A stretch of DNA of 64,000 bases from Macrostomum lignano. Its lineage: Eukaryota. This document shows, in pieces, positions 36,329 to 57,990 of the stretch. Where the stretch lies: the NCBI GenBank assembly GCA_002269645.1, contig NIVC01003519.1, forward strand, positions 29,601-93,600, in the 5' to 3' direction. Numbering within the stretch: position 1 is the first letter of the stretch; the number at the start of each line of letters is the position of its first letter. Below the pieces are notes generated by a model. That model made no database searches and was not told the origin of the DNA. It worked only from the letters and a program-made list of their open reading frames with translations. Position numbers and translations under genes: made by a program.

Positions 36329-39300
36329 TCAGAAGCGCGTCTCCTCGTGGTAGCCCTGATTGTCCAGCCCGTCCTCCGGCAGAGCTCGCAGGTGTCCGTC
36401 ATCGCCTTGACCGACTGCCGAGTCAAAACCGCTCGACCTGTGCCGGAGGTCCGGGCAGAGGTGCGCCGGATGATCCAGCGAGCTGTACTCCGGCAGAGAC
36501 AGCTGTTGCTGCTGTTCGTCGTGAATCGAGTGAAGGTAGCCGCTGAATGCTTCCAGATGGCGGACACATTCACTTGGTCGTCGAGACGAGCCGACGCCGT
36601 GTAGCGATGGGTCCTCGCCGGCGCTGTGGCTGATGCTGTAGGTCCGCGTCTGTCGGCGCCGCTCTCGAGCCGCGTCGTTGGCGTGCTGCGAGATGGACAC
36701 TCGGCGACTGCGGGTTTGCGAGCGAGTTTGTTTGCAAGGAGCTAAAGCCCCTTGGTGCTAAAGCCCCTTGGTGCTGGCGCCCCTTGGTGCTAAAGCCCCT
36801 TGGTGCTAAAGCCCCTTGGTGCTAAAGCCCCTTGGTGCTAAAGCCCCTTGGTGCTAAAGCCCCTTGGTGCTAAAGCCCCTTGGTGCTAAAGCCCCTTGGT
36901 GCTAAAGCCCCTTGGTGCTAAAGCCCCTTGGTGCTAAAGCCCCTTGGTGCTAAAGCCCCTTGGTGCTAAAGCCCCTTGGTGCTAAAGCCCCTTGGTGCTA
37001 AAGCCCCTTGGTGCTAAAGCCCCTTGGTGCTAAAGCCCCTTGGTGCTGGCGCCCCTTGGTGCTAAAGCCCCTTGGTGCTAAAGCCCCTTGGTGCTAAAGC
37101 CCCTTGGTGCTAAAGCCCCTTGGTGCTAAAGCCCCTTGGTGCTAAAGCCCCTTGGTGCTAAAGCCCCTTGGTGCTAAAGCCCCTTGGTGCTAAAGCCCCT
37201 TGGTGCTAAGGCCTTGTTAACCTTGCAAACTGTCTTCTGTTTGAGCTTCTTTTGAAAAGTTCTTTCAGTACTAAAACAGTCGTTGAATAGACAGCATAGA
37301 GCTGTCATTTTTACATAGACACTTGCATGAATTACATTAGCTAAACTTAATGAAAGTGTTTAATAAAATATTATTTCACTAATGTTCTTTCGTACTCGGA
37401 TAAACTGACGCCGCTGGTTGATGCACCGCCTTGCTCGCCAATGCTGCTTCCCGTTTCATCCTGAAAATTATGCAGGCACTCGCAAAAATGTAAATTCCAT
37501 CTAGATCGAGTCATGGACAGCTGAAGTAGAAGGACTCCCTCGAATCGTACGAATGTCGCCGGTAAAAATGTTATTTTTTATTTCACACCTGACCTAATGG
37601 GCAGATGTGCAACCGACAGCTCAGTCGCAGCTATTTGCGTGGCGCATCTGAAGGCTGCGTACGGCTGTTCAGTCCAAGGATTGGGGGCCGTCACACACAG
37701 CCTCAATTACCCCAGCTAATGCTGGCACCCATTCTAGCTCATTCACCTTGGTGAACTGAAGCAATGCAGAGTTAAGTGTCTTGTGCTCAAGGAACCAATT
37801 GTTCTGAGAGGGTCGAGAATCGAACCACCGACCTTTGATTCCAGAGTTCGACTCTCTAACCCCTTTTATAACATTCTTGAACGTTTAATAATTCTAAATT
37901 GATGAAGTATGTTTTGTCCGAGGTTGACTCAAAACTTACTCGAATTCGGAAGTTCAAAAGGTGAAAAATCACTAAAAGCACAAAGAACTTATCAATTTGC
38001 AAATTCAGCGTCCTTCTACTTTAGCTATTGATTGCATAATGAACAATATTTCAGTAGCCTTTGCACCTCAACCAGCTCCTGGTAGAAATTGGACAGCGCG
38101 TAAATCACCGCGTCGTGGACGGTCACAAACAGACCAGCTTCGGAGCGTTTGTCGAAGAAGTTGGCCTTCCTCAGAAGCGAACGGACAAGCGAAGTGCAGC
38201 CGGACAAGTACATTTCGACGCCAATTTTACTGAAATCGTCGACAATTTTTGTCAGCAGACGGACACCCACGGCGTCAATGAAGGCGCAGGCCGACAGGTC
38301 CAAGATGATGCAGAAGACGTTTACAGTCGGCTCGCTTTCGTCGTCGCTATCAACGGAAGCTGGAAGATCAGCCGAATCGATGGAGCCCATGGATTCGTAC
38401 GACTTTGAGGCGGTGATTGGCAGGTTCTTGAGCTCCTCCGAGGAGCTCAACTGGGCGCGCTGGCGTGCTATGGCGCTCTTTTATGGCAAATAATTTGGGG
38501 AAAGGTTAAGTCACTTTGTAAACAATCTCTGGTTAGAAAGTTCGTTTTTTAGGGGGCAGACTAGTTTAAGCAATCAACTCCGACGTCCGGCTTTCGTGCC
38601 AAGGTACCCAGGTTCGATTCCGTGTGTAATTCTACAATAATTTGAGACCCTGTCCTAAGGCATATCTCGGTAAAGTCAGGGTCGTATGTGTATACGCTCG
38701 TACCTGCGTACGTTCGAGTATCTGTGTACGTGTGAGCGATTCGTGGTCAGAAGGGATGAGCATGATTGCTTGCCTCCTCGTTGGCGTTGGCTACGAAAAA
38801 ACGTATTACTGAGACAGTACTGTAGTTCTCAATTTTTCTTAGGGCGAGTCTGGTTGCTTCCCGAATCCATGGTTTGACTTGGACGCGTCGATGTTAACTC
38901 GGTGTTCAAGGACAGTAATTATAGTTAAAGGTACAGTGCCTGACAACAACTAGGTCAGAGTTGTTGCAGACCATGTGCTATTTTTGCATGTCTTCTTTTT
39001 TATTCCTGTACCTGCCCCTGTACGTGATTTCATGACTGTTGTATTGGTTTAACAGCAGTAGCCCCAGCGGAAACGTAGACAGATTAACATGAATCCGTTA
39101 AATGATGATTGCAAAAACAATGTCGTTGAATTTACCGGATGACTTCCCTCTTCCTTGACAACTCCGAGCACTTCCTTGATGCCCTGGGCGTTGAGCACGT
39201 CAGTCCGAAGGTTCATATCGCCGCTGGCTCCTCCGCTTCGCTTGGCTGCGGCTTTAGCGCGTTCGAGAATCTTCTTCGGATTCATGGCCACGGAGCGGAA

Positions 39301-42300
39301 TAGGCGCTTGCGAAAGTTGTCTGCGCTGGCGAAATAGAGCGAGCCGTCGAATTTAAAAATTTTCAGGCCAGGAATTTCTTCAGCCTGAATAGTAAATATT
39401 TTTTGGGTTCACGAATTTCAGTAAAAACGAAGTGTCGATTTTTTGCGAGGCCATGTTACTTTTTGGCTTGTACTATTCTCAGCTGTTAAGAGTCAACCAC
39501 TAGAGGCACTGTGCATTACACGACTGGTGATAAGAGTTACGTAGTAAAGACTGTTTTACAGCTTGTGTGAGCGCTCACGGACCGTCATGCTGTCCTGTTG
39601 ACGTAAGTGGCCTAAGAAATGCATAGTGACGGCAGCAACTACTAAGAGACTGAGCTACATGCTAGCACGACCGCTATGTACCAATCGTCTTACAATAGCC
39701 TCATCGGCCATAACTCGATAGTTTTTTTAAGTTCTCTTTGCTCTGAAACTCACCCCTTTAATCTTCTTAATGTTCCTATAAATGTCAGTTTTCGGCACTC
39801 GCCCCAGCAGGTAGGCCTTCGGAGCCTGGGTCCGATAAATGATGGTGAGCAACGAGAAGGCGACCCCGATTCCCAGACCGATGGGCAGGTCCAGACCAAG
39901 GATTGCAGCCAGCGTTACAATCCAAATTGACTGTAATTACATGGGAATTCAACTAATTACAATCAATCATATTGTAAAAAGTAATAAACAGTGAGCGTAC
40001 AAAGTCGTATCGATTGGTTCGCCACAGTCGAGGCAGTTGCTCCACTTGCAGGATCATGTTCTTCAAATTCACGATTATAATTGCGGAAAGTACGCACTGA
40101 AATTGATAATGCAATTATAATATAGGATTGCTCACTTGATCAGCAAATTATGGAATAGACTGCTGATAAACAGGTATTCACCTTGGGTACCGGCTCAAAA
40201 TAGGAGCAAAAAGTAAGAATGCTGATTAGTGTAATTATTGTAGCGTAAACCGAATAGATCTGAAGTGCGAAATAAAATGGCACATTGTAAACGGCATAAG
40301 GTATCATTCCTAAATTATGACTCTTACTTAAGGCAACTTTTTCTTACTAGTGTCTTTCCTCTCATGGACTCGTGCAGCGAGGTGCAAGCAATGGACGAGG
40401 CCGACACGAACGTGCTGAACCAGCTCATGCCGAAGTTGACAAATCCGTAGGCTAGGACCTCCTGGTTGGCGTCCACTTCATATCCGTGACGTAGAGCGAA
40501 GGTCTTGGCTACAGACACCGACAGGGCATAGGAGATTATGCCAAGCACGATGCCGTTCACTAAAATTCCGGACCCGCTTGTGAAATGCTCCGGCAGTGGA
40601 GCGCGCGGCACCTCGAATCTGAAGTTAAATTTTGATGGGTCGCTTTTAAACCGGTGTCAGAAATGCGGTGTCAGATGGGTCTTAGTTAAAAAGTTCTATT
40701 TGCTTCACACACTTCATGTCTGCATAAAAGTAACCCCGTCAATCTGATAAAAATGCGTAAAAGTCTTTTTTAATCCTATACTGATGGATAAAGCCATATC
40801 CGACACTGACAACCTGACTTTCCATTACTGCTATGTTGAATTGTTTCTATTCGTTGCTTCTGTAAATTATGGTTGACTTTCAAAGTAAAAGACGTGTGGC
40901 TTTTTCTCAAAGAGAAAGTTTTTGAAAATTTTAATTATACCGTTAAAAGAAGCGATAGATAACGGTGGCAAAAGTGGTATTTTACATTTTCCAAGCGCGG
41001 CTTACCCTTGTCGAATGACGCCAACATTTTCCACTTTAATAGTCCCCTTCCAATTCATGAACTGCGACATTAGAAGACTTGTAATCAACTGAAATCGAGT
41101 TATATTGTGTTTGTGTGCTTCTTATACTCGCATCTTCTCGTAACAACAAATCAACGGTTTAAAAAAATAGCGCAAACCTTACCACAATGATGTCGATTGG
41201 AATTGGAATTTTCACATATTTAGAGCACTTCTCGTTCACCAGCTTGATGGCCAGCAGCAGAGCAAAGAAGGCTACGAAAATGCCGATTGTGTATCCGTTT
41301 ACCTGACCGGTGAATAGCCTTTTGAATGCCTCGATAAAGTACTAAATGGGGTTAGATGGAATACAAAAAAACAGATGTAGACATCTCAACTTATAATACT
41401 GACAGAATGTCAAATACCAATGGATTAGGTTACATCTCAAACGAAACTAGAACAAGTCAACGCTATTGCAAGTTTGTGTCGATTAAAAACTAAACTAGAA
41501 CGACTAAGAACGACAAAACTAAACTAGAAATTAGTTTAATTTCTTAGTATTTTTACAGTGTTCTATCTGGACTACTGAATTAAAAAATATGTCCAAGTAG
41601 AACAACCATGTGTCTTATCCTACGTTGATTAACAAATTTGTCGAACCAAAGTTTAACAAAATTTTATCAAAGAGTAATAAGAAATATTTTTAAAGAATTT
41701 TTGTTCGAATTCCTTTTGCGAACTTATTTAAAAATTAAATCTCAATTTAGTGAACAAAACTATATTATGCGCGTTTCCGCTCCATTAATTTTTCTTCAAA
41801 ACTATTAACATTAATGAACTTGCAAATTAGGACCTGAGTAACTTTATTACTAAAAAACGCTCACAATAGTTTACCTGACCACCTGCAAGAACCAAGGCCA
41901 TTGTTACTCACCATGAAGAATTTCCCGTTGCCATTTATGGCCGGAATTTTCGCTCCGAGCAGATTGCCCAACTGACTGCTGACGATGTGCAGCGCAGCGC
42001 CGCAGGTGAACGCGCTATTCAACGGATCGGACATGTAGATGGTGAGAAAGCCCAGCTGCAGAGCGCCCAGCAGAATCTGCAACAGCCCAGCAACCATGGT
42101 AATGGATAAGGCCACCATTGCGTTCGCGTCATCCCGGTTAATGCAGCCAGCTGGAAATGCGAGGGAAAATTCCAGTTATGTTGATTTGACAGGCAAATAC
42201 GCTTGAATAGCCTCCTAAAATTTTTTTTTAAATTTTTCTACATTTAAAAAAACTACCGTCGTCTAAAGTTTTTCTATTGGTACAGCTCGACGATAAGTTG

Positions 42301-43957
42301 TTGAAGTTTCTTTAAAAAGGAATCATAATTAGATAGATTTCGCCACTGATGCTTAAAAATGCAAAGAAACCAACCTGTCGCTCCTGTCGTGACATTCGGA
42401 GCCGTAGTAACCAAAGCCATTGTTGTAGATTCGGTAGCGATGGTAGTTGATTCGTTGCCAGTATACAGACCAGCATTAGAGACTGAGGCAGTTTCGCAGA
42501 GTCCAACACCATTGGGGTACACCTGTTGGACACCGGCTCGAACTGCTTCGCCAACAATTAGCGATACGGCGCCTTGACTTGCTAAAAATTAATTAGTTAA
42601 TTCGATTTCAAGATTAGCGGTTACATTGTGCATCGATGTTTACCTTTCAGGGATGCTAAACAAGCAATGCTGTTTTGTCTTTTTGGGTTGTTAATAAAAT
42701 GACAAATCGACTGTCGATCATGACGGTTGGATTGTTGATGAGGTGACGGTTGGATTGTTGATGAGGTGACGGTTAGATTGTTGATGAGGTGACGGTTGGA
42801 CTGTTGATGAGGTGACGGTTGGATTGTTGATGAGGTGACGGTTGGATTGTTGATGAGGTGACGGTTGGATTGTTGATGAGGTGACGGTTGGATTGTTGAT
42901 GAGGTTACGGTTGGATTGTTGATGAGGTGACGGTTGGACTGTTGATGAGGTTACGGTTGGATTGTTGATGAGGTGACGGTTGGACTGTTGATGAGGTGAC
43001 GGTTGGACTGTTGATGAGGTGACGGTTGGATTGTTGATGAGGTTACGGTTGGACTGTTGATGAGGTGACGGTTGGACTGTTGATGAGGTGACGGTTGGAC
43101 TGTTGATGAGGTGACGGTTGGACTGTTGATGAGGTGACGGTTGGACTGTTGATGAGGTTGGATTGTTAATGAGATGGCGGTTGGATTGTTGATAATGTGA
43201 CGCTGGGACTGTTTTTCCAATAGATTGAAATTCCAATTAGCTGGATGACGGTTCTGTCCTCATTAAATCCTTTAACAAATTTAGAAATGGAAAAGACAAA
43301 TTAACTTACACATGTTGAGATGATTCGACGTCCCGAAGATAAAGTAGATCAGCATAGCAAAAAAGGCCGAATAGAATCCGTATTGCGGCTTCACGTTTGC
43401 CAACAATGAGAAAGCGATTGCTAAAATTCAACAAGGAAAAGCTTGACTTTTTAACGTCATTAAAATTAATTGAAGTGCTTTTTAAACTCACCCTGCGGAA
43501 TGATGAACAGTCCAACGCTAACACCTGAAATAAGGTCAAACACAGCGTACTCGCGAACTTTATAGTTGACAAACACGTTGATGCATGGAAACGCTTTGTT
43601 AAGAATTCCCATGGCTTTAGTTTTTATGTCCTTTTTCTCTTTAAATTGATTGGCTTTGCGTTGCTGCATCAAATTGATCCGGTGCGCTTTGCGTTCGCTC
43701 GGTTCCAGACGAATCTGATACTCTTCTTCCAGCTGCACTTCGTTGTAGGTCGGCCTGGAAGCAATCGTCCCACCGCGTTTGCCGTCGTCTCCAGCACCGC
43801 CACCGGCTGATGCCGTGATGGCTGCGAGATCCGTCAGCCTCTCGTTCGACATCTGCTTGCGAAGATCTCTGGGAATGTTGGCCGGGTTTCGGTTCGGCTG
43901 GCCGGCTCCGCCGCCGCCGCCACCGCCGCCACCACCCCCAGGACGTCCCGAAGACAT
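36329..43957 (-). CDS. SLC26: SLC26 anion transporter with STAS domain, paralog A (~996 aa)
   Basis: 14 exons: 43957-43492, 43420-43310, 42581-42375, 42150-41912, 41341-41183, 41088-41006, 40618-40348, 40259-40182, 40096-40001, 39930-39754, 39384-39136, 38477-38067, 37460-37396, 36707-36329 (2,991 nt, in frame). Motifs DLISGVSVGLFIIPQ, YFIFGTS, LGFLTIYMSDP, KIPIPID, YEVDANQE, GKT, FKFDGSLYFAS, IILDLSACAFIDAVG. Ends ETRF. Confidence 0.93.
36742..37210. repeat. 16-bp minisatellite (GCTAAAGCCCCTTGGT)
   Basis: Last intron of SLC26 paralog A. Confidence 0.96.
37585..37865 (-). mobile_element. tRNA-derived SINE, family A, copy 2
   Basis: Shares GCAGATGTGCAACCGACAGCTCAG, CATCTGAAGGCTGCGTACGGCTGTTCAGTCCAAGGA and CACACAGCCTCAATTACCCCAGC with copy 1; B-box-like GGTTCGATTCT. 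Confidence 0.85.
38555..38760 (+). mobile_element. Degenerate tRNA-SINE-like fragment
   Basis: B box GGTTCGATTCC and a CCTGCGTACGT segment shared with the SINE at 61833. Confidence 0.45.
42720..43190. repeat. 23-bp minisatellite (GACGGTTGGATTGTTGATGAGGT)
   Basis: Intron 2 of SLC26 paralog A. Confidence 0.95.
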
Positions 43958-44052
43958 GTCAAATTTGTTAGAATTTTCCCAGTTTTCCAAAATTAATTCA
44001 CTCGACGTTCGGATAACTGGGGAATGGTTATAAAAGGGGATGTGAAATTAAG

Positions 44053-44614
44053 AGTCAAAATGAAGCCCGAAATATACGGTCCCGATTTCTCTAAGCAAAT
44101 CCCTTCATTTGGAGCCAAATTGCTCCCATTATGCCGAAAACGCGACCAATGTAGCATTTGGGGATCTCTACGCTCTTATGGGGAGAAATGGTTGTGAGGG
44201 AGCTTATAGCACCTTTGACCATGATATAAATGTGCTATTTATGTCTCCACGGAGACAGGGAAACACAATGAGAGCTTGGTTGGGGGCAATAACAAACAAT
44301 ATTGAGATAAAATAATGGAGGGCACAACATATCATTACTATATCGCTTCTATTCTTCATACTAACACATAAAAAGAGCGTTTATCGTCATATAAGCATTT
44401 GAAGCTCCAAATGAAGGTATTGGCGTAGAGAAACCGGGACCCAATGCTTCATGCTCCATTCTGGAGCCTTAGTTAAGTTCACGTGAAATCCTCATTTATT
44501 CGTTTTTCCCCATAGAGATCCCCAAATGCTAAACGGGTTGGTTTTTGGTGGTCGGAAGCAATTTGGCTCCAAGTAGGGAAATCGGGACCGTATATTTCGG
44601 GCTTCATTTTGGCT
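44053..44614. mobile_element. MITE-like element with ~120-bp imperfect terminal inverted repeats
   Basis: CAAAATGAAGCCCGAAATATACGGTCCCGATTT...TTGGAGCCAAATTGCT...TAGCATTTGGGG.ATCTCTA at 44056-44175 is mirrored at ~44505-44612. No clear TSD. Confidence 0.8.
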
Positions 44615-45119
44615 ATTCTGTTTCAACAATAGCCCTTAATTTATAATGCTAACAACCTACCATCTTATCCAACAACAACTTACCCAAACAGTAGTAACAG
44701 CCAGATCTCGGAATCGTCCTTCGAAAGAATCAACTCTTCTACTAAGACGAGGCTAGAAAAATCAGCTATTTAGAGTCAGAAAAATGGAGAAGAGATCAGG
44801 CCTAATTAAGCACCGGAAGAGAATGCAAAACAATTTGCTGCTTTAAGACCTGTGAAACTTGTTGGAATTAGCTGACTCTGTTTGCCTGTGCCAAGCTCTG
44901 TAATAGCTAATGAATTACCGGAAAAGAAAACAGTAATCAAGCGCGTTTAGCACTCTCAGACTTTATGGTTAACCGTTGAATTTCCAGTATCAATACCAAT
45001 TTTCTGAATCACTGAGTTCGTCGGTTTCGACTGATTGCAATTGGCAAATGTGTCTTTAGAATTGAGTCAGGAAAATGTATAGAAAATGGGGTATGTTGAG
45101 AGGCATGCTGAATTTTCAT

Positions 45120-46010
45120 CTGAGGGGCGCCAGTTTATTTGAGGGGGCGCCAGTTCATCTGAGGGGGCGCCAGTTCATCTGAGGGGGCACCAGTTCATCT
45201 GAGGGGGCGCCAGTTCATCTGAGGGGGCGCCAGTTCATCTGAGGGGGCACCAGTTCATCTGAGGGGGCGCCAGTTCATCTGAGGGGGCGCCAGTTTATTT
45301 GAGAGGGCGCCAGTTCATCTGAAGGGCGCCAGTTTATTTGAGAGGGCACCAGTTCATTTGAGGGGGCGCCAGTTCATCTGAGAGGGCACCAGTTCATCTG
45401 AGGGGACGCCAGTTCATCTGAGGGGGCGCCAGTTCATCTGAGGGGCACCAGTTCATCTGAGGGGGCACCAGTTCATCTGAGGGGGCGCCAGTTCATCTGA
45501 GGGGCGCCAGTTCATCTGAGGGGGCACCAGTTCATCTGAGGGGGCGCCAGTTCATCTGAGGGGGCGCCAGTTTATTTGAGGGGGCACCAGTTCATCTGAG
45601 GGGGCGCCAGTTCATCTGAGGGGGCGCCAGTTTATTTGAGAGGGCGCCAGTTCATCTGAGGGGGCGGGCGCCAGTTAATCTGAGGGGGCGCCAGTTTATC
45701 TGAGGGGGCGCCAGTTTATTTGAGAGGGCGCCAGTTCATCTGAGGGGCGCCAGTTTATTTGAGGGGGCGCCAGTTCATCTGAGGGGGCGCCAGTTCAACT
45801 GAGGGGGCACCAGTTCATCTGAGGGGGCGCCAGTTCATCTGAGGGGGCGCCAGTTCATCTGAGGGGGCGCCAGTTCATCTGAGGGGGCGCCAGTTCATCT
45901 GAGGGGGCGCCAGTTCATCTGAGGGGGCGCCAGTTCATCTGAGGGGGCGCCAGTTCATCTGAGGGGGCGCCAGTTCATCTGAGGGGGCGCCAGTTCATCT
46001 GAAGGGCACT
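45120..46010. repeat. ~20-bp GC-rich minisatellite (GAGGGGGCGCCAGTTCATCT)
   Basis: Between the two SLC26 start codons. Confidence 0.96.
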
Positions 46011-46652
46011 ATTTTATTGGAGAGGGCGCGCCATTTAATTTGACGGGACGCCATTTCCAAGAAAGCGTATTGCATTGCGACCGAAAAAAACGAATTCACC
46101 AAGCTGTATGTTTGTTTTAATCGCAGTCAAATTTTCTCAACACCGACAACTGTAACCGAGTTTTGTAGAAGGGGCTGCTGTTTCTGCAACTCAGTTGCTT
46201 ATTCGTCGCCAAAATAATTTTGGCTTCCCGTCAAAAAGTACCGCTTGCAAAGGGGCAACGGCTTGCTGCTTCATTAGCAAATTCGACGTATTCTGCTCAA
46301 TGCCTTGACTTTATTGCATTCTTTCTTATAAGTCAACCCCTACGTGCTTAAAACCGAGAACAGCGAACAAGCTGATAAAACTTTGACGTTCGTCCGACGT
46401 TCGGTTTGGGTTTAAAGTAGAAAAACTTTACGATATAAACTGCATTCAAGATAAAGACAGTGAAGCAGAACTCCCTGATCAGGACTTGGTCTGTGAGCCT
46501 TACTGACTGCTTAAGAATGCACTAAAAGCAGTCACGGTTCACCCTCATGGTCATAAGATCGAACGCTATTTGAAGTTTCCAACAAAATTATATCGCCTTT
46601 AAATTGCCTAAAAAAGAAGAACATCAAAAAGTTAATTAGCTGAAATACTTAC

Positions 46653-47843
<1,191 letters not shown>

Positions 47844-48339
47844 CTTCCCTTTAACGCCCATAGTGAGTCATGCGTGTGGCACGGAGGTTCAGTATTTTTC
47901 AATAGCCTTCAAAGGGAGTAGCCGTTCAGATACGGTAGACGCCAAAGGCTGGATGTCGAGCAGGCATATTATGACTTTTACTTGCCAGTCACCAGTGGGC
48001 AATGCATTATCGTTTTCTGTCTTATCAGCTTAGGGCGCGAGTTTTACAGCGCAGAGATAGATAGCGCCCCAGCAAGCTTGAGGTCACAAAAGCGCATAAA
48101 TAGAATGAAGAAATGAGCGCAATGCCAGAAACGCTATCAATTCGTGCTGAGCACTTAATCGGAATTTTTTGTTATCGACTTTGAGCAAAGCCTGAACGTC
48201 GAGCATAACGGACCGAATTTGATTGCTGAGCAGTGGAAAACAGAAGGACGACGGCTTACACACTGTTTTGCTTAAACCAAGTCTTTCTTCTCTTGAAACG
48301 ATCGAGGTAAGTCGAGTAATAATGTGAACGGTCCGTAAC

Positions 48340-49000
48340 GAATTCTAATGAACTCTTGATGATGGGATTTGAATGTAATCTATCGAATTCTAATGAACTC
48401 TCAATGGGATTCGAATGTAATCTATCGAATTCTAATGAACTCTCAATGGGATTCGAATGTAATCTATCGAATTCTAATGAACTCTCAATGGGATTCGAAT
48501 GTAATCTATCGAATTCTAATGAAATCTCAATGGGATTCGAATGTAATCTATCGAATTCTAATGAACTCTCAATGGGATTCGAATGTAATCTATCGAACTC
48601 TAATGAACTCTCAATGGGATTCGACTGTAATCTATCGAATTCTAATGAAATCTCAATGGGATTCGAATGTAATCTATCGAATTCTAATGAACTCTCAATG
48701 GGATTCGAATGTAATCTATCGAACTCTAATGAACTCTCAATGGGATTCGACTGTAATCTATCGAACTCTAATGAACTCTCAATGGGATTCGAATGTAATC
48801 TATCGAATTCTAATGAACTCTCAATGGGATTCGACTGTAATCTATCGAACTCTAATGAACTCTCAAAGGGATTCGAATGTAATCTATCGAATTCTAATGA
48901 ACTCTCAATGGGTTCGAATGTAATCTATCGAATTCTAATGAACTCTCAAAGGGATTCGAATGTAATCTATCAAACTCTAATGAACTCTCAAAGGGATTTG
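48340..49000. repeat. 42-bp minisatellite (GAATTCTAATGAACTCTCAATGGGATTCGAATGTAATCTATC)
   Basis: ~15 units ending ~75 bp upstream of the SLC26 paralog B ATG. Confidence 0.96.
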
Positions 49001-49076: not shown

Positions 49077-52000
49077 ATGACGGACAAAGACTTCAGGAGG
49101 CCAAGCGTCGCCTCCCTCAGCGAGTTGCGCAACCAACTGCCTGACGATCTTCGTCAGCAGCAGAACTCGCGACAGACCGCGTCGAGGCCAACCTACACGG
49201 AGGTGCAGCTGGAGGAGGTGCACCAAATCAAACTGGATGACGACGAGAAAATCCGACACAAGAAGCAGCTTATGGAAAATCGCAAGGCCGGCCCGAAAGA
49301 AGTCCGTAGCAAAGGCGCCGTGGCTTTGGGAATATTGAGTAAAATATTCCCCGTAATTAAGGTCTTCGTCAACTACAAAGTCAAAGAGTACGCGGTGTAC
49401 GATCTCCTGTCAGGAATTAGTGTGGGAATGTTTATCATTCCTCAAGGTGAGCGGGGTTACTACGGTTTCTAATAGCTAATGTATTCACAGATGCCACTAT
49501 TTACTGTCGTCATTGACAACTGACGTAGAAGGATGCTAACACGTTCAATTTCTTAGAAATCTGCACTGGAAAAATCTGATTTCTTAGCGTCCTTCTTTAT
49601 CGGTCTTCAGTTAATACTAACACCACCATCACCTATTTCAGCCATCGCTTTTTTCCCTGCTGGCCCAGGTGAAGCCTCAATACGGTTTTTATTCCGCTTT
49701 CTTTGCCATGCTGATTTACTTTATTTTCGGCACCTCAAATCATCTGAATATGTGTAAGTTTGACGCCTGCTATTTCAATTTTTATATGCTCTTGGAGATA
49801 GAAATCTGACAAGGAAGCTGCGTGTACTATCGATTGGTGACTTCTCTGCTTTTCAAGTCTCCGTGTCTGTCACTCGTTTAACAGGTGACTTCTCTGTATC
49901 TAACAGGTGACTCCTCTATCTAACAGCTGACCCATCTGTGTCTAACAGGTGACTCCTCTGTGTCTAACAACTGACCCCTCTGTGTCTAACAGGTGACTTC
50001 TCTGTGTCTAACAGAGTGACTCATCTGTGTCGAACAGTTGACTCATCTGTGTCTAACAGGCGACTCCTCTGTGTCTAACAGGTGACTCCTCTGTGTCTAA
50101 CAAGTGACTCCTCTGTGTCTAACAAGTGACTCATCTGTGTCGAACAGTTGACTCATCTGTGTCTAACAGGCGACTCCTCTGTGTCTAACAGGTGACTCCT
50201 CTGTGTCTAACAAGTGACTCCTATATCGGGTGACTCTCAATTTAATGAGTGATTGAAAAAAACCAAAAACGTCTGCTCACCGCCAACCAACCCCCAATTC
50301 AGCCAGTCAAGGTGCCGTTTCGCTCCTGGTCGGCGAAGCTGTGCTGGCTGGCGTGGAACAGGTGCACCCTAACGGGGCCGGGATCTGCGTCGAGCCTAAC
50401 GACACCATCACCACTTTGGGGCCGAATCTGAACTTCACTGATCTAACGACTGAGATGACGACAACTTTGCTGACGACTACAATGGATATGATTGGAATTA
50501 ACAGCACCGCTAGTAAGGAAAATTCCTGTCTGGGTTGGGTCAGATATGCCTCAGATAGAAAGTAATAAAAATTGCTACTTACCCAAATTGAAACTGGTTC
50601 TTAAAGAAAAATTATTTTGTCGTCAATCCCAGACCCAGACATGTGCATCCCCCGAGCTGACGCCAACACTCTGGTCTCAATATCCATCACCATGGTGGCC
50701 GGAGCTGTCCAATTGCTGCTCGGATTGCTGCAGTTCGGCTTTCTCACCATCTACCTGTCCGATCCGTTGAACAGCGCGTTCACCTGCGGGGCCGCTCTGC
50801 ACATCTTAAGCAGTCAATTGGCCAACATGCTCGGCACGACTCTCCCGCCAATCTCGGGTGTTGGAAAATTCTTCGTGGTGAGTCACGTTTGAATTGGTTT
50901 TGGCTGCTAGGATATAGCTCGTAGAGCTGGGCAACTTGAGCAGTTTGCTCTTATGTCGGTCAGTGTACATTGGCAAATTCTCTTAGCTGTCAATGCACCG
51001 CGTCCCTATTTGGTTTATGATAATCTAAGAAGACAACCAATTAGTTATTTGTCCGGCCCTTTGCTTCGTTTCAGTACTTTGTAGAGGCGTTCAAACAGAT
51101 TTCTGCCGGAAACGTAAACGTGGCATCGATCATAGTATGTCTGGTATCTTTCGCTGTGCTGCTAGCTGTCAAGATAATTAACGAAAAATGCTCAAAGTAC
51201 GTCAAGATTCCTATTCCAATCGACATTATTGTGGTGAGTTTTGCCAACATTTTCTTATTTTTACACAAGGAATTCTTAACACGTCATAAATTTTCTATAT
51301 GGTCAAGAAAATACTTGACGCTCGTAGGTTGCCAGAGATTAGATTAATTCTATGAATACCAAGGACATCTTAAAGAAGTCAAGGTCGTCTTTTGATGTCA
51401 AAAAATGTCTTAAGATGTTAAGGACGTCGTAGGATATCGTCTTAGGATGTTAGGGACATATTAGGCTATCAAAAATTTCAAGGTCTTAGGATGTCAAGAG
51501 TGTATTAGGGTGTCAAGGATGTCTTAGGAGTTCAAGGATGTGTTAGGATGTCAAGAATGTTTTAGGAATTCAGGGATGTCAAGATGTTTTAGAATGTCAA
51601 GAATGTCCAGGATATCTTAGGATGTCAAGGATGTCAAGGATGTCTTAGGATATCAAGGATGTCTTGGGGTCGCAAGGACAAAGATGTTAAGGATATCTTA
51701 GGATGTCAAAGATGTTTTAGGACATCATCAAGAGTGTATAAAACGACTTTAAAGACACATAATCATTTCGATCGAAAACGTTTCACTGTGGTAAAACATT
51801 TAAAAACATGATCCACTTGCTTCTCAAAACGCTAATTAAGCTTGTGACGAGTTTGCTGCTGTCACAGTTTCTGAACTGGGAAACCGAGCTAGATATTTCA
51901 ACTGTCGGAGCCATTGAGAGAGGGTGAGCGACTTCTTTGAATGTTTTTACTGTAATGCTCCATCAAGGCGCATTTACAATAGCTTGAAGTTCCTACTTAA

Positions 52001-55000
52001 AACGAACCTTCAGATTCCGGGCACCTACCGCTCCCCCCGTTGAGCACTTCACCAGCGGAACTGGGATCATAATTAACGGCTTGGTACTCGGTATTATATC
52101 GTACTCGCTCTCCGTCTCTGTCGCCAAAACTTTCGCCGTTCGATACGGCTACGAAGTGGACTCCAACCAGGAGATGATCGCCTACGGCGCTGTGAATTTT
52201 GGCATGAGCTGGTTCAGCACCTTCGTGTCCGCTTCGTCTATCGCTTGTACGTCGCTGCACGAGTCTATGCGAGGCAAAACTCTGGTAAGTGCAGTATACG
52301 AATAACGAATAACGGTGTTGTAACGGGTCTTGTAACTTTAAACTGCCGCGTGGAGCTGAGCCAATTAGCCCCGCCGATAATATTTTTGTAGTCCCTCTCT
52401 AGATGAGAGAAATCCTTGGAACCTTTACTGCAGAATAACCACCAGAATAACATCTGAGTATAGTTTTTTGAAAATATAGGCCTGTCTGCTGAATTTTCTA
52501 GATAACATCTACAATAAAATACATGAAATGTACAGTATAATGTACAGTAGAGTCTTCTTACAAAGACAAAACGCTGCCTTCTAAGAAAGTAAACGCTTGC
52601 GTAGCCGTGTTAAAGTGGCAGCGATAGTCTATGGCCAGGCTTATGGCCAGCCATGGTTAAAACAAATCGAATAATCAATTCAATAATAAATCATAAGTGA
52701 GAGAGTCGCTCGTTTCATTGTCAAAAATCAGCCTTTAGGATAATGCAATCGTCTATGGTTAAACCATGAGCACATTTATTTATTTTTTCACTTAAACTTC
52801 AGGATAATGATTTCAAACTCGGGATAATGGACACCTATTTTTAGAACAAAACAGCAAACACCAACAACAAAAGATTAGCGCTATGGAAAGTTAATTGTGC
52901 AGTATCAATATGGCGCAATTGTCATAGTGCCGAAGACCATTACAGATTGCAATTGTTGAAAGTGCAGTTGTTCATAATAAAGATATTCCGACCGTTCATC
53001 TGACGACCATCAGACACGCTCACTGCTTCTTGCACGATGGAACTTTGGATGCTGATGTCAGCAGGCATTGTTACTTGACCGTGGGTCGCGGCGCTTTGTC
53101 CCATGTTCAACGCACGCGACACTGCATCGCTGCATTGTTGCAGGGACTTGTCCCGTTTAACTGCCAGGTAGCGCCGGACCGTGCTCTCGGACTTTTGACC
53201 CGTGATAGCCATGATCTCGCTCATCGAATTCCCAGCCGATTCCAGGTCTCAAGAAAGTGCAAGAAGTTCAAAAAGTCTTCGTTATCCTTCATGTCCTTCT
53301 GAGATGTGGAAAGTCTTGAGATCCAATTGAGTTTGCTGCTAGATACGTTGGCTAAACTTTCGACAGGCAGATTGCCCCAGTTGATCGGATATGACGTCTG
53401 GTTCTCCATGGCCAAGCGAATGTAGCTATTTACGTTTTATTCTCTCTTTCTCTCCACATCTCCTTCCTTTCCACCCTCCTAACCCCCAGCCTGTTTGCAA
53501 CTTCGTTGTCTATGGCCCAAACTCCAGTAAACCACCTCAGTCTTTATGTCTCTCTCTCCTCGGTAACCCCTCTCTCCTTTCGATGCCCTTTTTGTCTATG
53601 GCCCCACTGAAATTCGACAATGCGGTTACGCGCACGAGTGAGCATAGGACTATTATCCTAAAGTCTCACTTACGAATAACCAACCAATGTTGTATCTTGT
53701 ACTCAATTGTACTCAGTTATGAGGATCCGTGCAGAGAAATAGATGCCTGAGAACCTAACGGCACAGAGATTTTACAGACCTAGCAAGCAAAAAGTCAAAG
53801 CGCTCTACACATGTGTGTTTATGGGTCAGCGAAATGCGTATAACTACACTCGAACTTGCTTAATCATGGGTTTATTAATAATCAAGTAATATTATATCGT
53901 AATTGGAACAACGCTTTTAATGAATCATCTGCACTTTTTAACGATAAGTAGTTTAATCATATATCTTTTAAATATATGCGCCCACTTCCAGCTCTACTCG
54001 CTCTATGCAACGATAATCACCTTAGTTGGAATTCTGACTTTCGCCCCGGTGTTCGCCCCGGTTCCAAAGGTAAGCTATTGAGATGTAAGCTGCAATGTAC
54101 TCAGCAAACAATTGATTTCTGTTTTCTTATTCTAGTGCGTCTTGTCTGCTATCATTTTGGTCAATCTGAAGAACATGATGATGCAAGTTGAACAGCTGCC
54201 AGGGCTCTGGAGAACTAATCGATACGATTTTGTGAGTTTTTTTTGTACTTTTTGTTCGAATTTTTAGAACAGGTAATGTTTAGTCCAATGTCGAGAATAT
54301 CGCCTTAGCGTTTGAGGATATCAGATCGGTAGCAACACCATTGTATTCCGGTTCAGTTCTATGAGAGCCAACCCCGAAGGCGTAGACTCACAGGGGTCGG
54401 CAAACTCCCGCACATGCGGCCCGTAAAGCCTCTATCCTTTGAGACTTAAGAACAGCTTGTGCCTCTTCTCAGCTCTCTTCTCCCCTCTTCTGTTTTCTCT
54501 TCGCTCCTCTCGTCTTCTCTCCTCGCCTCTCCTTTTTTCTCTCCTCTTTTCTCTACTCTACTCTCTTCTCTTTCCTCTTCTCTCCTCTCCTCTCGTCTTC
54601 TCTATTCTCCTTCAATACCCCACCACTCCTTTCTCCTAAATCTCTTATCTCTTCTCTGTTTCCCCTCTTTCTCCTCTCCCTTTTCTGGCCCGCAGTCAAG
54701 CACTAGGTTCTCTATTAGGCCCCTGATGTAAAAAGGTACTCGTACTTTCTACGATGAACAAGTCAATACAGCTGTACACCCTATGGGAGCGTGTGTCCGC
54801 GTGTTTATCTGTGTAAGCGTGTTGGCGTGCAAGCCTGGGTCATCGGAATGGGCATAAGTTTTAATTAGCCGTTATTCGAAGCAGGGGCCGCAAACCCTCT
54901 GCAAACCAACTACACCAAGCCAACCACACCAAGTATTAGAAAATTACACCTGTAGTACGATTTTCAATTTCGACATTCAGGCAATCTGGTTGGTGACTCT

Positions 55001-57990
55001 GGCAGCCATTCTGGGCATCGACCTCCCGATTGGCCTACTCGTTGGCGTCATCTTCTCCCTGGCAACTGTCATTTTCCGATCGCAAGCGCCTAAAGCTTAT
55101 CTACTGGGTCGGGTGCCAGAGACCGACATCTACAAGAACGTAAAGAAGATTAAAGGAGTAAGTTGACTTTCAACTATTTTTGAGTAATTTTTCAACTATG
55201 GGTCGTGGCCTTTTAAAAAATTAAAGACGCTAACTTAGCGAGGAATATGTTTTACTTTTTATCTTCATATTTTAGTAGTTATGATACATTTAAGCCCTCT
55301 CAAAAAATTAGGTGTTTACTCCAAAGCGCTCCTGATGACAGTGCTAAAAGGATGCCAGAGACAATTTAATTAGCAAGTTTTAAACAGAAGAGCCGTTGCT
55401 AAAACCTTGCATTTCTGACACAAAAAAATTGATAAATGCCTTCATTGATCATCCTGCATCTTCCCCAAAGAGGGGTAAATGGGATCCAATGTGAAATTAA
55501 GGCTCTTTGTCTTTAATACGCAAATAAAAATCCAAACACTCGACCCAAAAACCTCTTCCAGGCCGAGGAAATCGAAGGCGTTCGAGTGTTCAAATTCGAT
55601 GGCGCGCTGTACTTTGCCAGCGCAGAAAATTTCCGAACCCGTCTGTTCCGTCAGGTGGCGATGAACCCGAAGAAGATTCTGGCCAAAGCCAAAGCGCACG
55701 CCAAGAAGACGGGAGCACTTGCCAGCAACTTGGACATCCGCACGGAAGTTATGGACAAAGAAGAGATCAAGGAGCAGCTTGAGATTGTCAAAGCCGAAGG
55801 AAGTCATCCAGTGAGCATAAATAAATTTAATAGCACAATAATATGATAAATAAATTCACCGTTTTGTAAGCCAACCCCACCAAAAAGTGTCAATGGGTTA
55901 TACTCTTTGTAAGCGTGTGCCAGATATCTGTAGTAATATCTGTAGAGACAACGCATGAATCACCGGAGTAAAATTTTGCAGGACGACAGAGCTCGACAGC
56001 TAGCACAAGCATCCATGGACGAACTAAATCGAAGCAACAACAGCCAGACGGACTTGGATGACTACGACGACAAAGACGATGTCAATGGGCCTGTGGTGAA
56101 CGTGTTCTGCATCATCTTAGACCTGTCCGCTTGCGCGTTCACCGACGCAGTTGGTATTCGGCTACTGAGTCAGATTGTTGAAGACTTCAATAAAATCGGC
56201 GTGGAGATTTATTTAGCCAACTGCACATCCTTGGTCAGATCGCAGCTACGCAAAGCGAACTTCTTTGCTAAGCGAAGCGAAGAGAATGGCGTGTTTGTGA
56301 CTGTTCACGACGCTGTCCTTCACGCGCTGTCCACACTTTACCAGGAGCTGCTTGAGGTAAGCATTAGATAGGATTGGAATCGAGGTAAAACTTATAGCAA
56401 TAATTTTAAACGTTAACCTTTTTTTCTGGCGTAAAGGTGGAATTTTCATTTGTAGAAACTCCATAATTTTGTTTATTCTATTTAAGTCAAAATGAATACG
56501 ATCCATGTTGTGACCTGCAACGTCTCGGAAATGAAAATAAAATTTACGATTGTTAAGGAATACGAGGCAACCTATGCTAAAATATGCATCAATACGTAGG
56601 CCAATAGGCGCATCAGTGCGTGTAAGTATGCCAACATAAAAAGGAACTTGTTAGAAAACTTTATAACGAGAAACTGTCACATTTGTAACATTTTATCAGG
56701 ACGAGAACGAGTCAGAATCGGACTTCGAAGCCAGAGACCACATGGAGACTGTGCCTGCGCCCCAGTAAGCTTTTTGGCGAAAATTTAACACTTCTATATT
56801 TTGTATCCTGTTAGGAAGTCGGCGTGCTAGCTGACAGCTGACTCGATGCCATTGAGGAGGCAAGTAGCTCATAGTTGCGAGTATAACCCTTGAGCACGCT
56901 CACGCAGGCTCCGAATTACACAGTTGATCTGGCCCCTCCATTGCAGTCTGTCGCATCACCACGCCAACAAGAAGCTCTCTACCGGCAGCGATGAAGCGGC
57001 CAGAGAGCTGCGCCGACAGTCTCGCAAGGTTAGCAGGCAGCAGGCGATGTCGGCTCATTCAGACGACTTAAGCGGCGGTGCGGCTTTGTCTTCAGCGTCC
57101 AGCTCGAGCAGGAGGATCAGCCAGCGAGCTGAGCACGCCGACCGGATTAACGAGGAGCGCGAGCAACAGCAACAGCAGACGTCGACGAAGAATCGCTACC
57201 AGCCCGACGAGGCGAAACCGCTGCCCGTTTTCGATGAGGCACGGGATGCTGGACAAGCTTCTACATCGTCGCGCGGTGTTGCAGACGTTCTGGTTTGTGT
57301 TTTCATCAGCTTATTTTAGCGCAAGAGTTTATACTTGATAAAAATGAAGATTATCGTCTTGATGAAGCACAATTGCCTAAAAGCTGTTTCACCTTACAGT
57401 TTGACAACAGGTTCATAAAAATATGATTTCTTAGACACTCGTAGCAGCTAGTACGATAACAGTGGAAAAATCATAAAATTTAAATTCTCGATCTTCGGAG
57501 TCCTATAGCAACCGTTTTCGATACTCTAGAACACTGTTATTCAGTTATTCAGAGTTCTGCAGAAACTTATCGTCACTATCCTACAGAATCCATATTTAGT
57601 GCCTTATCGCACCTATATTCAGTGACCTACAGGATCGCTCTTTAGCGCTCTACAATTCCCAACTTCTGTGCTCTACAGAACCAATCATCAGTGCCCTACC
57701 ACAAAAACGTTTAGTTCCCGATCAGTAATCGAGTTTCACTGTTAGACGCCTTGCAGAACCCCTCTAAAGTAGACTCTAGCACTAATCTAAATTAACCATA
57801 AGTATCTTTACAGTGCATATTAAAAATGAAAATTGAAAACCCGAATTTTCAGGTGCACGAAGACGAAGAATCCCGGCGCGAACGGGAGGAAATGGACTTG
57901 AACTTTGCCGAGATGCTGAAAAGCCTACCAGACACGGACGATGACGACGCTGGGGAGGACAACGCCGGCTTCCAGGACTCCGCGCTTTGA
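49077..57990 (+). CDS. SLC26: SLC26 anion transporter with STAS domain, paralog B (~990 aa; apparent +1 frameshift in exon 2)
   Basis: 15 exons: 49077-49446, 49642-49753, 50303-50512, 50633-50877, 51075-51233, 51841-51923, 52014-52284, 53992-54069, 54136-54231, 54981-55157, 55562-55810, 55982-56356, 56700-56764, 56947-57292, 57853-57990. Seven consecutive exons (159, 83, 271, 78, 96, 177, 249 nt) and a 65-nt exon match paralog A exactly in length. Exon 2 is 112 nt vs 111 nt. Ends DSAL. Confidence 0.92.
49870..50222. repeat. 22-bp minisatellite (TGTGTCTAACAGGTGACTCCTC), same family as 205-900
   Basis: Reverse complement of the array at the window start; intron 2 of SLC26 paralog B. Confidence 0.93.
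51360..51720. repeat. Degenerate GATGTCTTAG/GATGTCAAG repeat
   Basis: Intron 5 of SLC26 paralog B. Confidence 0.75.
52940..53415 (-). pseudogene. Degenerate Crypton-like tyrosine-recombinase C-terminal catalytic fragment
   Basis: EIMAITGQKSESTVRRYL matches the IMxxTGHxSxxSLxxY box (His replaced by Gln, Tyr kept). Upstream, broken frames give KLNWISRLS and ITKTF*TSC, a plausibly decayed NHSLR box with CGA>TGA. Lies in intron 7 of SLC26 paralog B. Confidence 0.65.
54391..54725. mobile_element. hAT-like MITE remnant with internal CT-rich tract, apparently inserted into a SINE-like sequence
   Basis: Starts CAGGGGTCGGCAAACT...CGGCCCG and ends GGCCCCTG; no 8-bp TSD found. Flanks (54345-54390, 54745-54930) resemble consecutive parts of the SINE at 61833. 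Confidence 0.5.

What the first reader, a model, noticed from the sequence alone, without database searches (positions are those of the whole stretch)
40348..43420. Both SLC26 paralogs have a remodelled anion-binding site: TM10 Arg replaced by Cys and TM3 motif rewritten
Seen in both genes: TM10 reads FVSASSIACTSLHESMRGKT (Cys codon at 40384-40386 and 52246-52248), TM3 reads GTSNHLNMSSQGAVSL, and TM1 reads PQAIAFS. Established: prestin and pendrin have SLSRS (prestin S398/R399), GTSRHISIGPF and PQGxAYA/F here, and these helix ends form the substrate pocket. Channel-like SLC26A9 has Val in place of the Arg. Inference: identical changes kept in two diverged paralogues imply selection for a different substrate or mode (uncoupled/channel-like, non-anion substrate, or sensor/motor role) - a candidate new SLC26 functional class. 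The alignment is by eye, anchored on the downstream E and GKT.
Basis: partly seen in the sequence, partly recalled or inferred. Interest (0 to 1): 0.7.

Follow-up and report, generated by a model that had tools for sequence, protein, structure and literature searches.

The report
Flatworm SLC26 transporters lacking pocket arginine
Two neighbouring anion-transporter genes of the flatworm Macrostomum lignano belong to a flatworm-only branch of the SLC26 family in which the positively charged arginine and the phenylalanine that normally line the ion-binding pocket have been replaced and then kept by selection, so these proteins probably move ions differently from their well-studied relatives; nobody has tested this.

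Summary
The window comes from Macrostomum lignano. It holds two head-to-head SLC26 genes: A on the minus strand (BOX15_Mlig016666g2) and B on the plus strand, 68% identical.

- **Alignment.** Ala499 falls on S398 and Gln195-Gly196 on F137-A138.
- **Selection.** Synonymous sites between A and B are saturated (pS 0.73, dN 0.27), yet all three motifs are identical at the protein level.
- **Wider clade.** The feature is not limited to two genes. Several further M. lignano paralogue groups, planarian Smed-slc26a-1 (gut-expressed) and three unnamed transcript contigs form one clade (92.5% NJ bootstrap). At the Arg position the clade has Cys, Ala or Val, and Gln-Gly in TM3 is invariant. Gln occurs in 0 of 147 other SLC26 sequences, 97% of which have Arg.
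- **What is conserved.** The shared trait is loss of Arg plus Phe-to-Gln, not Cys itself. Clade-defining changes cluster in the pocket (P = 4e-4), and the pocket is more conserved than the rest of the membrane domain.
- **Function.** Untested. My best inference is anion transport with altered coupling or selectivity, by analogy with SLC26A9.
- **Gene B.** It carries a one-base frameshift as assembled, probably an assembly error.

The parts
36329..43957 (-). Gene A, SLC26 paralogue BOX15_Mlig016666g2 (996 aa, 14 exons). Exons 1-12: 43957-43492, 43420-43310, 42581-42375, 42150-41912, 41341-41183, 41088-41006, 40618-40348, 40259-40182, 40096-40001, 39930-39754, 39384-39136, 38477-38067. Then about 37460-37396 and about 36710-36329.
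   Evidence: GT-AG splicing worked out. 100% identity to P0001. Pfam Sulfate_transp 2.9e-82 and STAS 1.4e-16.
49077..57990 (+). Gene B, SLC26 paralogue, 68% identical to A and head-to-head with it. Exons: 49077-49446, 49642-49753, 50303-50512, 50633 (or 50639)-50877, 51075-51233, 51841-51923, 52014-52284, 53992-54069, 54136-54231, 54981-55157, 55562-55810, 55982-56356. Then about 56700-56764, about 56946-57292 and about 57853-57990.
   Evidence: Near-identical annotated copies or alleles are P0004-P0007. Identities 752/757, 770/772, 689/703 and 660/665.
40384..40386 (-). Gene A Cys500 codon (TGC), at the position of prestin R399 and pendrin R409. It lies in the first turn of the TM10 half-helix.
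   Evidence: The AF2 model has a helix at 498-506 preceded by a beta bridge at 495-496.
52246..52248 (+). Gene B Cys codon (TGT), same alignment column as Cys500 of gene A.
42571..42576 (-). Gene A Gln195-Gly196 codons (CAA GGC), at the N-cap of the TM3 half-helix. They replace the Phe-Ala of canonical SLC26 (prestin F137).
   Evidence: Gln is invariant in the clade and found in 0 of 147 other sequences. Gly is invariant in the clade where 82% of others have Ala.
50308..50310 (+). Gene B Gln codon (CAA), equivalent to Gln195 of gene A.
40348..40618 (-). Gene A exon 7, encoding TM9-TM10 and the segment FVSASSIACTSLHESMRGKT.
43310..43420 (-). Gene A exon 2, encoding the end of TM1 through GTSNHLNM. 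The TM3 motif continues in exon 3 (42581-42375).
49649..49654 (+). T6 homopolymer in gene B exon 2. It has one base more than the conserved reading frame allows, giving a frameshift as assembled.
   Evidence: P0005, taken to be the same locus from a separate gene model, reads in frame.

Best explanation
Genes A and B are two old tandem (head-to-head) duplicates. They belong to a flatworm-specific SLC26 subfamily with a rebuilt substrate pocket.

Shown:
- The fold is a standard SLC26 fold: a 14-TM UraA-type core and gate plus a STAS domain.
- The TM3 and TM10 half-helices sit where they do in prestin.
- The TM10 Arg, which in prestin supplies about 40% of the positive potential at the site, was lost once in the ancestor of the clade. 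It is now Cys (Macrostomum), Ala (Schmidtea) or Val.
- The TM3 Phe-Ala that packs against the anion became an invariant Gln-Gly.
- The TM1 Gln and Phe/Tyr are kept.
- The rebuilt pocket is the most constrained part of the membrane domain.

Inferred:
- The proteins are still working transporters of small anions. The two helix dipoles and two Gln amides would bind the ion in place of a guanidinium.
- Without the fixed charge, binding would be weaker and less strictly coupled. The result would resemble the fast uncoupled Cl- transport of SLC26A9, or at least a shifted anion selectivity, rather than 1:1 exchange as in pendrin or SLC26A6.
- The likely site of action is gut or other epithelia, because the planarian member is expressed in the gastrovascular system.
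- The Cys thiol itself is probably not catalytic or liganding, since Ala and Val serve in relatives.
For: - Alignment of C500 to R399/R409 and of Q195 to F137 is gapless and is reproduced by MAFFT on 120, 150 and 159 sequences.
- Selection between A and B: pS 0.73 (saturated) and dN 0.27, so omega is well below 0.1. The motifs are identical despite 9/39, 10/54 and 13/75 nucleotide differences.
- Monophyly: 92.5% of 200 NJ bootstraps for the whole clade and 100% for each subclade. The clade never groups with SLC26A9 or with the canonical M. lignano SLC26 P0123.
- Clade-defining positions: 5 of 10 fall in the 44 pocket columns out of 585 evaluated, hypergeometric P = 3.7e-4. Within the clade the pocket is 39% invariant against 16% for the rest of the membrane domain.
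- Fold: AF2 pLDDT is above 90 through most of the membrane domain, outside the 226-260 loop. Beta bridges plus half-helices are predicted at 192-213 and 495-506. The best Foldseek matches are prestin, SLC26A6, A3, A4 and A9, with TM-score normalised to the target of 0.72-0.87.
- Literature: SLC26A9 has Val393 and is an uncoupled Cl- transporter. R399V in prestin and R404V in SLC26A6 give small uncoupled Cl- transport (PMC11078650). In SLC26A7, F104A enhances Cl-/I- transport, so the TM3 Phe acts as a barrier (PMC12356840). R399 contributes about 40% of the site's positive charge (PMC10699807).
- Expression: Smed-slc26a-1 is listed as 'Gastrovascular system; Gut' (Vu et al. 2015, supplementary file 1).
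Against: - No transport, current or expression data exist for any Macrostomum member.
- In pendrin, R409C is a loss-of-function disease variant. In SLC26A9, V393R alone abolishes transport, and R399V barely opens prestin. The authors conclude that single residues do not set the transport mode. The A9 analogy is therefore weak.
- SLC26A9 keeps the TM3 Phe, so this pocket is not A9-like in detail.
- Subclade A has an extra basic residue eight positions downstream (R508 or K, in ESMRGKT / ESLKGKT). I could not place it in three dimensions because the structure tool returns no coordinates.
- The taxa behind three clade members (Logan contigs) are unknown.
- The tree is neighbour-joining only.
Confidence: 0.5

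Rival explanations
1. They are ordinary coupled anion exchangers. The pocket changes only retune which anions are preferred (for example HCO3-, sulfate, oxalate or formate), with Gln195 and the helix dipoles making up for the missing Arg.
For: - The whole elevator architecture, the STAS domain, the TM1 Gln/Phe and E505 (prestin E404) are conserved.
- Other vertebrate SLC26 lineages vary at this column: Lys in a crocodilian sulfate transporter / SLC26A1-like cluster, Thr in fish SLC26A10, Ser in a frog pendrin-like protein.
- Single-residue swaps do not convert the transport mode.
Against: - Every experimentally tested removal of this Arg from a coupled exchanger (pendrin R409 variants, SLC26A6 R404V) impaired exchange or uncoupled it.
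- The changes include the otherwise highly conserved TM3 Phe.
Confidence: 0.25
2. The pocket now binds a different class of substrate. This could be a neutral or cation-coupled organic solute, or a thiophilic or redox-active species that uses the Cys in Macrostomum.
For: - The fixed positive charge is lost and a polar amide is gained, with Gly giving extra room at the TM3 N-cap. The pocket is strongly conserved within the clade.
- The UraA fold is known to carry nucleobases (SLC23).
- The rice SULTR-like transporter SPDT carries phosphate (listed).
Against: - Cys is replaced by Ala or Val in clade members, which argues against thiol chemistry.
- The two helix N-termini still create a positive site.
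- No acidic residue was gained at any of the ten clade-defining positions.
Confidence: 0.13
3. They are non-transporting proteins: a sensor, a regulatory partner acting through the STAS domain, or a prestin-like motor.
For: Gene copies are expanded. The long, poorly conserved C-terminal tails are disordered in the model (pLDDT below 50 after residue 901).
Against: - R399 is required for prestin's non-linear capacitance, so a prestin-type motor is unlikely.
- The pocket is more conserved than the rest of the membrane domain, as expected for a binding site still in use.
Confidence: 0.07
4. It is an artefact or decay: the genes are pseudogenes or mis-assembled, and the motif has no functional meaning.
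For: Gene B has a frameshift as assembled. The M. lignano assembly is repeat-rich.
Against: - Omega is well below 0.1 with saturated dS.
- About 690 codons remain open after the frameshift. In-frame copies exist in other contigs and gene models.
- The motif is shared with intron-less contigs from independent sequencing runs, which I read as transcript assemblies, and with a cloned planarian gene.
Confidence: 0.03

Closest known systems
SLC26A9 (vertebrate; uncoupled, channel-like Cl- transporter)
   Same: It has an uncharged residue (Val393) at the TM10 position where other SLC26 proteins have Arg. The overall fold matches (Foldseek target-normalised TM-score 0.78-0.80). Putting Arg at that position abolishes its function.
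   Different: It is not orthologous: it groups with the flatworm clade in 0 of 200 bootstraps. A9 keeps the TM3 Phe-Ala (PGTFAVIS) where the flatworm clade has Gln-Gly. The flatworm residue is Cys, Ala or Val.
Prestin (SLC26A5), pendrin (SLC26A4) and SLC26A6
   Same: These are the best sequence and structure matches (E = 1e-134 to thermostabilised prestin; Foldseek ranks 1-5). The TM1 PQ...F motif, E404-equivalent, GKT motif, STAS domain and half-helix geometry are shared.
   Different: They have S-R on TM10 and G-P/T-F-A on TM3. Here these are A-C and S-S-Q-G. The same change in pendrin, R409C, causes disease in humans.
Smed-slc26a-1 (Schmidtea mediterranea; Vu et al. 2015, eLife)
   Same: It is a member of the same Arg-less clade: 48% identical to clade member P0125 and inside the sister subclade, which has 100% bootstrap support. 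It has the same GAQGVVSL TM3 motif and SMSASALHES on TM10.
   Different: It has Ala rather than Cys at the Arg position. It belongs to the sister subclade, not the A/B subclade. Only an in situ pattern (gut) is published. No one has commented on its pocket.
Canonical M. lignano SLC26 (BOX15_Mlig005698, P0123)
   Same: Same genome and same family.
   Different: It keeps SLSRS on TM10 and lacks the TM3 Gln-Gly (GTVAIISL). So the species has both pocket types, and the Arg-less form is a derived addition rather than a replacement.

Membership tests
SLC26/SulP superfamily | Sulfate_transp (PF00916) membrane domain followed by a STAS (PF01740) domain | tested here: met
   Pfam E-values 2.9e-82 and 1.4e-16, both above the gathering scores.
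SLC26/SulP superfamily | 7+7 inverted-repeat UraA fold, with TM3 and TM10 as half-helices preceded by short beta strands | tested here: met
   AF2 model with pLDDT above 90 through most of the membrane domain. Beta at 192-193 with helix 196-213; beta at 495-496 with helix 498-506. The top 43 Foldseek hits are all SLC26/SULTR structures.
Canonical eukaryotic SLC26 anion exchangers (A3/A4/A5/A6 type) | Basic residue (Arg) at the N-terminus of TM10 in the anion site | tested here: not met
   Cys500 in genes A and B. Arg is present in 97% of 147 non-clade sequences.
Canonical eukaryotic SLC26 anion exchangers (A3/A4/A5/A6 type) | Conserved Phe at the N-terminus of TM3 (prestin F137, A7 F104, A9 F128) | tested here: not met
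   Gln195. Gln is found in 0 of 147 non-clade sequences, where Phe is the commonest residue (53%) and Met, Ile and Val come next.
Canonical eukaryotic SLC26 anion exchangers (A3/A4/A5/A6 type) | TM1 Gln and Phe lining the pocket (prestin Q97, F101) | tested here: met
   Q155 and F159 align to them. P0002 has Tyr at position 159.
Canonical eukaryotic SLC26 anion exchangers (A3/A4/A5/A6 type) | Coupled anion exchange activity | not testable with these tools
   Needs flux or electrophysiology assays.
SLC26A9-type uncoupled transporters | Orthology to SLC26A9 | tested here: not met
   0 of 200 NJ bootstraps group the clade with the A9 representative P0203.
SLC26A9-type uncoupled transporters | Uncharged residue at the TM10 Arg position | tested here: met
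   Cys, Ala or Val in the clade against Val393 in A9.
SLC26A9-type uncoupled transporters | Large uncoupled Cl- conductance | not testable with these tools
   Needs patch-clamp or two-electrode voltage clamp.
Prestin-type voltage-driven motor | R399, which is required for non-linear capacitance | tested here: not met
   Cys at that position. R399V abolishes non-linear capacitance (PMC11078650).

The most novel reading that the evidence does not exclude
The Gln/Gly/Cys(Ala,Val) pocket defines a new functional class of SLC26 proteins in flatworms. On this reading they carry a substrate, or use a coupling mode, that no characterised SLC26 has. Examples would be a non-halide or organic solute, or a redox-modulated or very-low-affinity anion pathway in the gut. 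The class would have expanded by repeated duplication in Macrostomum.
Probability: 0.15. Interest if true: 0.75.

Novelty: new variant of a known kind. Interest (0 to 1): 0.45.

Why it matters
How SLC26 proteins that look almost identical end up as coupled exchangers, fast uncoupled transporters or a motor is an open question. Single-residue swaps in the human proteins have not answered it (PMC11078650).

This clade is a natural, selection-tested experiment. Arg is removed and the TM3 Phe replaced together, with three different residues at the Arg position in relatives. A canonical Arg-type SLC26 sits in the same genome as an internal control.

Expressing a few of these proteins and their back-mutants would show directly what the Arg/Phe pair contributes to coupling and selectivity. 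It would also say something about ion handling in the flatworm gut. M. lignano and planarians are both open to RNAi, so an in vivo test is practical.

Tried and rejected
1. I first assumed an insect genome from the gene structure. The homology search showed Macrostomum lignano.
2. The second homologous-protein search, using a clade alignment, returned essentially the same candidates as the first and no new clade members. The word index appears to have followed the first sequence only.
3. I tried to identify the organisms behind the Logan contigs from their run accessions. Only ERR14224705 appears in a paper, a coral-reef microbiome survey. The taxa of P0125/P0280, P0157 and P0128 remain unknown.
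4. I searched the literature for the M. lignano locus tags and for planarian SLC26 function. There were no hits for the tags and no functional work.
5. The AF2 model and Foldseek confirmed the fold and helix boundaries. The tool returns no coordinates, so I could not measure pocket geometry or where R508 sits.
6. I considered that a nearby Arg might slide into the R399 position under a different alignment. I rejected this because three independent alignments are gapless across TM10 from the conserved NQE motif through GKT.
7. I considered gene conversion as the reason the motifs are identical in A and B. I rejected it because the motif codons differ at 17-23% of nucleotides.
Full report
**What is in the window.** The sequence is eukaryotic and very rich in tandem repeats. 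Translating the minus strand between 44.0 and 38.0 kb gives 12 exons with canonical GT-AG borders. Read to a provisional in-frame stop, they encode 862 aa of an SLC26 protein. This is 100% identical to the annotated Macrostomum lignano protein BOX15_Mlig016666g2 (P0001, 996 aa). That model adds two further 3' exons, which take the gene to about 36329. A second SLC26 gene lies head-to-head on the plus strand from 49077 to about 57990. The two proteins are 68% identical. Pfam finds Sulfate_transp and STAS domains. The finding's coordinates (40348-43420) run from the end of exon 7 to the start of exon 2 of gene A.

**Check of the observation.** The Cys codons are at the stated coordinates: TGC at 40384-40386 on the minus strand and TGT at 52246-52248 on the plus strand. 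The key question was whether the by-eye alignment holds, and it does. phmmer against all PDB sequences aligns TM10 to prestin and pendrin without a gap from the conserved NQE motif through GKT. This puts C500 on R399/R409, A499 on S398 and E505 on E404. It aligns TM3 without a gap as well, putting N188 on the Arg of GTSRH and S193-S194-Q195-G196 on G-P-F-A. MAFFT alignments of 120 word-index hits and of 150 library representatives give the same columns.

An AlphaFold2 model has pLDDT above 90 through most of the membrane domain. It predicts the hallmark short beta bridges and half-helices at 192-213 (TM3) and 495-506 (TM10). Q195 is therefore the N-cap of TM3, and C500 lies in the first turn of TM10. 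Foldseek returns prestin, SLC26A6, A3, A4, A9 and A2 as the best matches.

The conserved frame stays open for about 690 codons afterwards. UniProt A0A1I8HB94 (P0005) matches window gene B at 770 of 772 aligned residues. It also contains the neighbouring WSC-domain gene, so I take it to be the same locus from a separate gene model. It reads in frame. I therefore treat the frameshift as a probable homopolymer assembly error, not as evidence of a pseudogene.

**Is it more than chance?** Between A and B, synonymous sites are saturated (pS 0.73) while dN is 0.27, so omega is well below 0.1. The three motifs are identical at the protein level although their codons differ at 9/39, 10/54 and 13/75 nucleotides. 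This excludes recent gene conversion and shows long-term purifying selection.

**How far the feature extends.** An exhaustive HMMER search of 1.84 billion cluster representatives found a very large score gap after the query's own cluster (1881 against 508 bits). Arg occupied the TM10 column in 139 of the 150 sequences aligned. The exceptions were informative:
- Two further M. lignano clusters (P0127 = Mlig027200, and P0129) carry TCQGVVSL in TM3 and SSM[TS]CS.LHES on TM10.
- Three unnamed contigs from public sequencing runs also belong here: P0128 (MTNQGAVSL), P0125 (GAQGVVSL with Val) and P0157 (Ala). They carry uninterrupted coding sequence on short contigs, so I read them as transcript assemblies.
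- A search with P0125 added two more M. lignano genes with Cys (Mlig006231 and Mlig022511) and Schmidtea mediterranea Slc26a-1, which has GAQGVVSL and SMSASALHES with Ala.
- M. lignano also has a canonical gene (Mlig005698, P0123) that keeps SLSRS.

In a neighbour-joining analysis (159 sequences, 598 columns, 200 bootstraps) the Arg-less flatworm sequences are monophyletic in 92.5% of replicates. The A/B subclade and its sister subclade each have 100% support. The clade never groups with SLC26A9 or with the canonical M. lignano gene. The simplest reading is a single loss of Arg before Macrostomorpha and Tricladida split, followed by repeated duplication in Macrostomum.

**What defines the clade.** I compared 12 clade members with 147 other SLC26 sequences. 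Only ten positions are clade-defining.
- Gln195 is invariant in the clade and absent from all 147 others.
- Gly196 is invariant in the clade where 82% of others have Ala.
- The Arg column is 97% Arg outside the clade and Cys (8), Val (2) or Ala (2) inside it.
- Positions 156 (TM1) and 191 (TM3) are also on the list.

Five of the ten fall in the 44 columns that make up the three pocket segments, out of 585 columns evaluated (hypergeometric P = 3.7e-4). Within the clade those segments are 39% invariant, against 16% for the rest of the membrane domain. So the pocket was rebuilt and then frozen. That is what one expects of a site still in use, and the opposite of decay.

P0003 keeps the Arg of GTSRH. 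PQS, the sister-subclade form of the TM1 motif, also occurs in ordinary Arg-type SLC26A6.

**Mechanism: the inferred part.** Established knowledge is as follows.
- The anion sits between the N-termini of TM3 and TM10, next to the TM1 Gln/Phe and the TM3 Phe.
- R399 supplies about 40% of the positive potential at the site (PMC10699807).
- SLC26A9 has Val at this position and is a fast uncoupled Cl- transporter. V393R abolishes its transport.
- R399V in prestin and R404V in SLC26A6 produce small uncoupled Cl- transport. R399V abolishes prestin's non-linear capacitance.
- Pendrin R409C/H/L/P variants are pathogenic (PMC11078650).
- In SLC26A7, the TM3 Phe acts as an energy barrier, and F104A increases transport (PMC12356840).

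On that basis my best reading is that these proteins still bind small anions, using the helix dipoles and two Gln amides. With no fixed charge and no aromatic barrier, transport would be less tightly coupled, or selectivity would be shifted. Because relatives use Ala or Val, the Cys thiol is unlikely to be essential. The shared requirement seems to be a small uncharged side chain. A prestin-like motor role is unlikely without R399.

The only expression datum for the clade is Smed-slc26a-1, listed as 'Gastrovascular system; Gut' (Vu et al. 2015, supplementary file 1). This points to gut epithelium.

All of this is inference. The authors of the mutagenesis study stress that single residues do not determine mode, and SLC26A9 keeps the Phe that is lost here. 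I put 0.5 on the overall account. The descriptive part is secure. Most of the remaining doubt concerns the transport mode.

**Comparison with known systems and novelty.** The proteins are unambiguous members of the SLC26/SulP family by domain content and fold. They fail two pocket features of the canonical eukaryotic exchangers, the TM10 Arg and the TM3 Phe. They share with SLC26A9 only the lack of a basic residue and are not its orthologues. Variation at the Arg column exists elsewhere: Lys in a crocodilian sulfate transporter / SLC26A1-like cluster, Thr in fish SLC26A10, Ser in a frog pendrin-like protein. Loss of Arg alone is therefore not unprecedented. The combination with an invariant Gln-Gly in TM3, fixed across a whole animal clade, did not appear in any other sequence I could examine. 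I found no paper that mentions it. I rate it a new variant of a known kind, of moderate interest, and useful as a natural experiment on what the Arg/Phe pair does.

**Limits.**
- The tree is distance-based only.
- The taxa of three clade members are unknown. One run accession appears in a coral-reef microbiome survey.
- Neodermata, Catenulida and Polycladida were not sampled specifically.
- No coordinates were available for the model, so I could not assess the position of the extra basic residue R508/K in subclade A.
- No functional data exist.

Noticed in passing
window 49649-49654 (gene B exon 2): A T6 homopolymer puts gene B out of frame right after PQAIAF. The conserved frame downstream stays open for about 690 codons. 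UniProt A0A1I8HB94, which I take to be the same locus from a separate gene model, reads in frame. Probably an assembly error.
   Followed up: partly
window 42721-43213 (gene A intron 2) and 49879-50222 (gene B intron 2); also 235-912: Both paralogues carry a tandem-repeat array in the same intron, with units of 23 nt in A and 22 nt in B. The gene B unit is the reverse complement, with one mismatch, of the 22-nt satellite at 235-912. The same satellite family therefore occurs twice in the window in opposite orientations.
   Followed up: no
window 43958-49076 (between the two start codons): The roughly 5.1 kb divergent intergenic region is largely tandem repeat: a 20-nt unit x45 (45115-46006), (ATAG) x298 (46653-47843) and a 42-nt unit x16 (48339-49006) ending just upstream of the gene B start. 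Any shared promoter must lie in very little unique sequence.
   Followed up: no
window 50633 / 50639 (gene B exon 4 acceptor): Two in-frame AG acceptors lie 6 nt apart (cccag|acccag|). The annotated copies use the upstream one, adding Pro-Asp (ANPDMC instead of ANMC). This may be tandem-acceptor alternative splicing in the extracellular TM3-TM4 loop.
   Followed up: no
window 33997-35478 (+), with parts of gene A antisense and gene B: UniProt A0A1I8HB94 (P0005, 1472 aa, 'WSC domain-containing protein') is a chimeric gene model. It fuses the upstream WSC-domain gene, antisense translation of gene A exons, and gene B.
   Followed up: partly
window 2758-7737 (-): Exons of a large NACHT / AAA_16 / NPHP3_N P-loop protein with weak WD40 matches downstream (NWD/NPHP3-like). 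Pfam NACHT E = 1.3e-10.
   Followed up: partly
window 11711-21700 (+): Exons with AlaDh_PNT_N and saccharopine dehydrogenase domains. This looks like a bifunctional lysine-ketoglutarate reductase / saccharopine dehydrogenase (AASS-like) gene, interrupted by long satellite arrays such as the 24-nt unit x86 at 15759-17810.
   Followed up: partly
gene A residues 214-262 (exon 3, 42581-42375) and the equivalent in gene B: The extracellular TM3-TM4 loop is long, rich in Thr, Ser and Asn with several N-x-S/T sequons, poorly conserved between paralogues and of low model confidence (pLDDT below 50 for 226-260). It is likely a heavily glycosylated loop.
   Followed up: no
L001 (Logan ERR14224705 contig, 3345 nt): The Val-type clade member P0125 comes from a run that a paper links to a coral-reef microbiome survey. 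An Arg-less SLC26 from an unidentified animal, possibly a reef-associated flatworm, is therefore present in that sample.
   Followed up: partly
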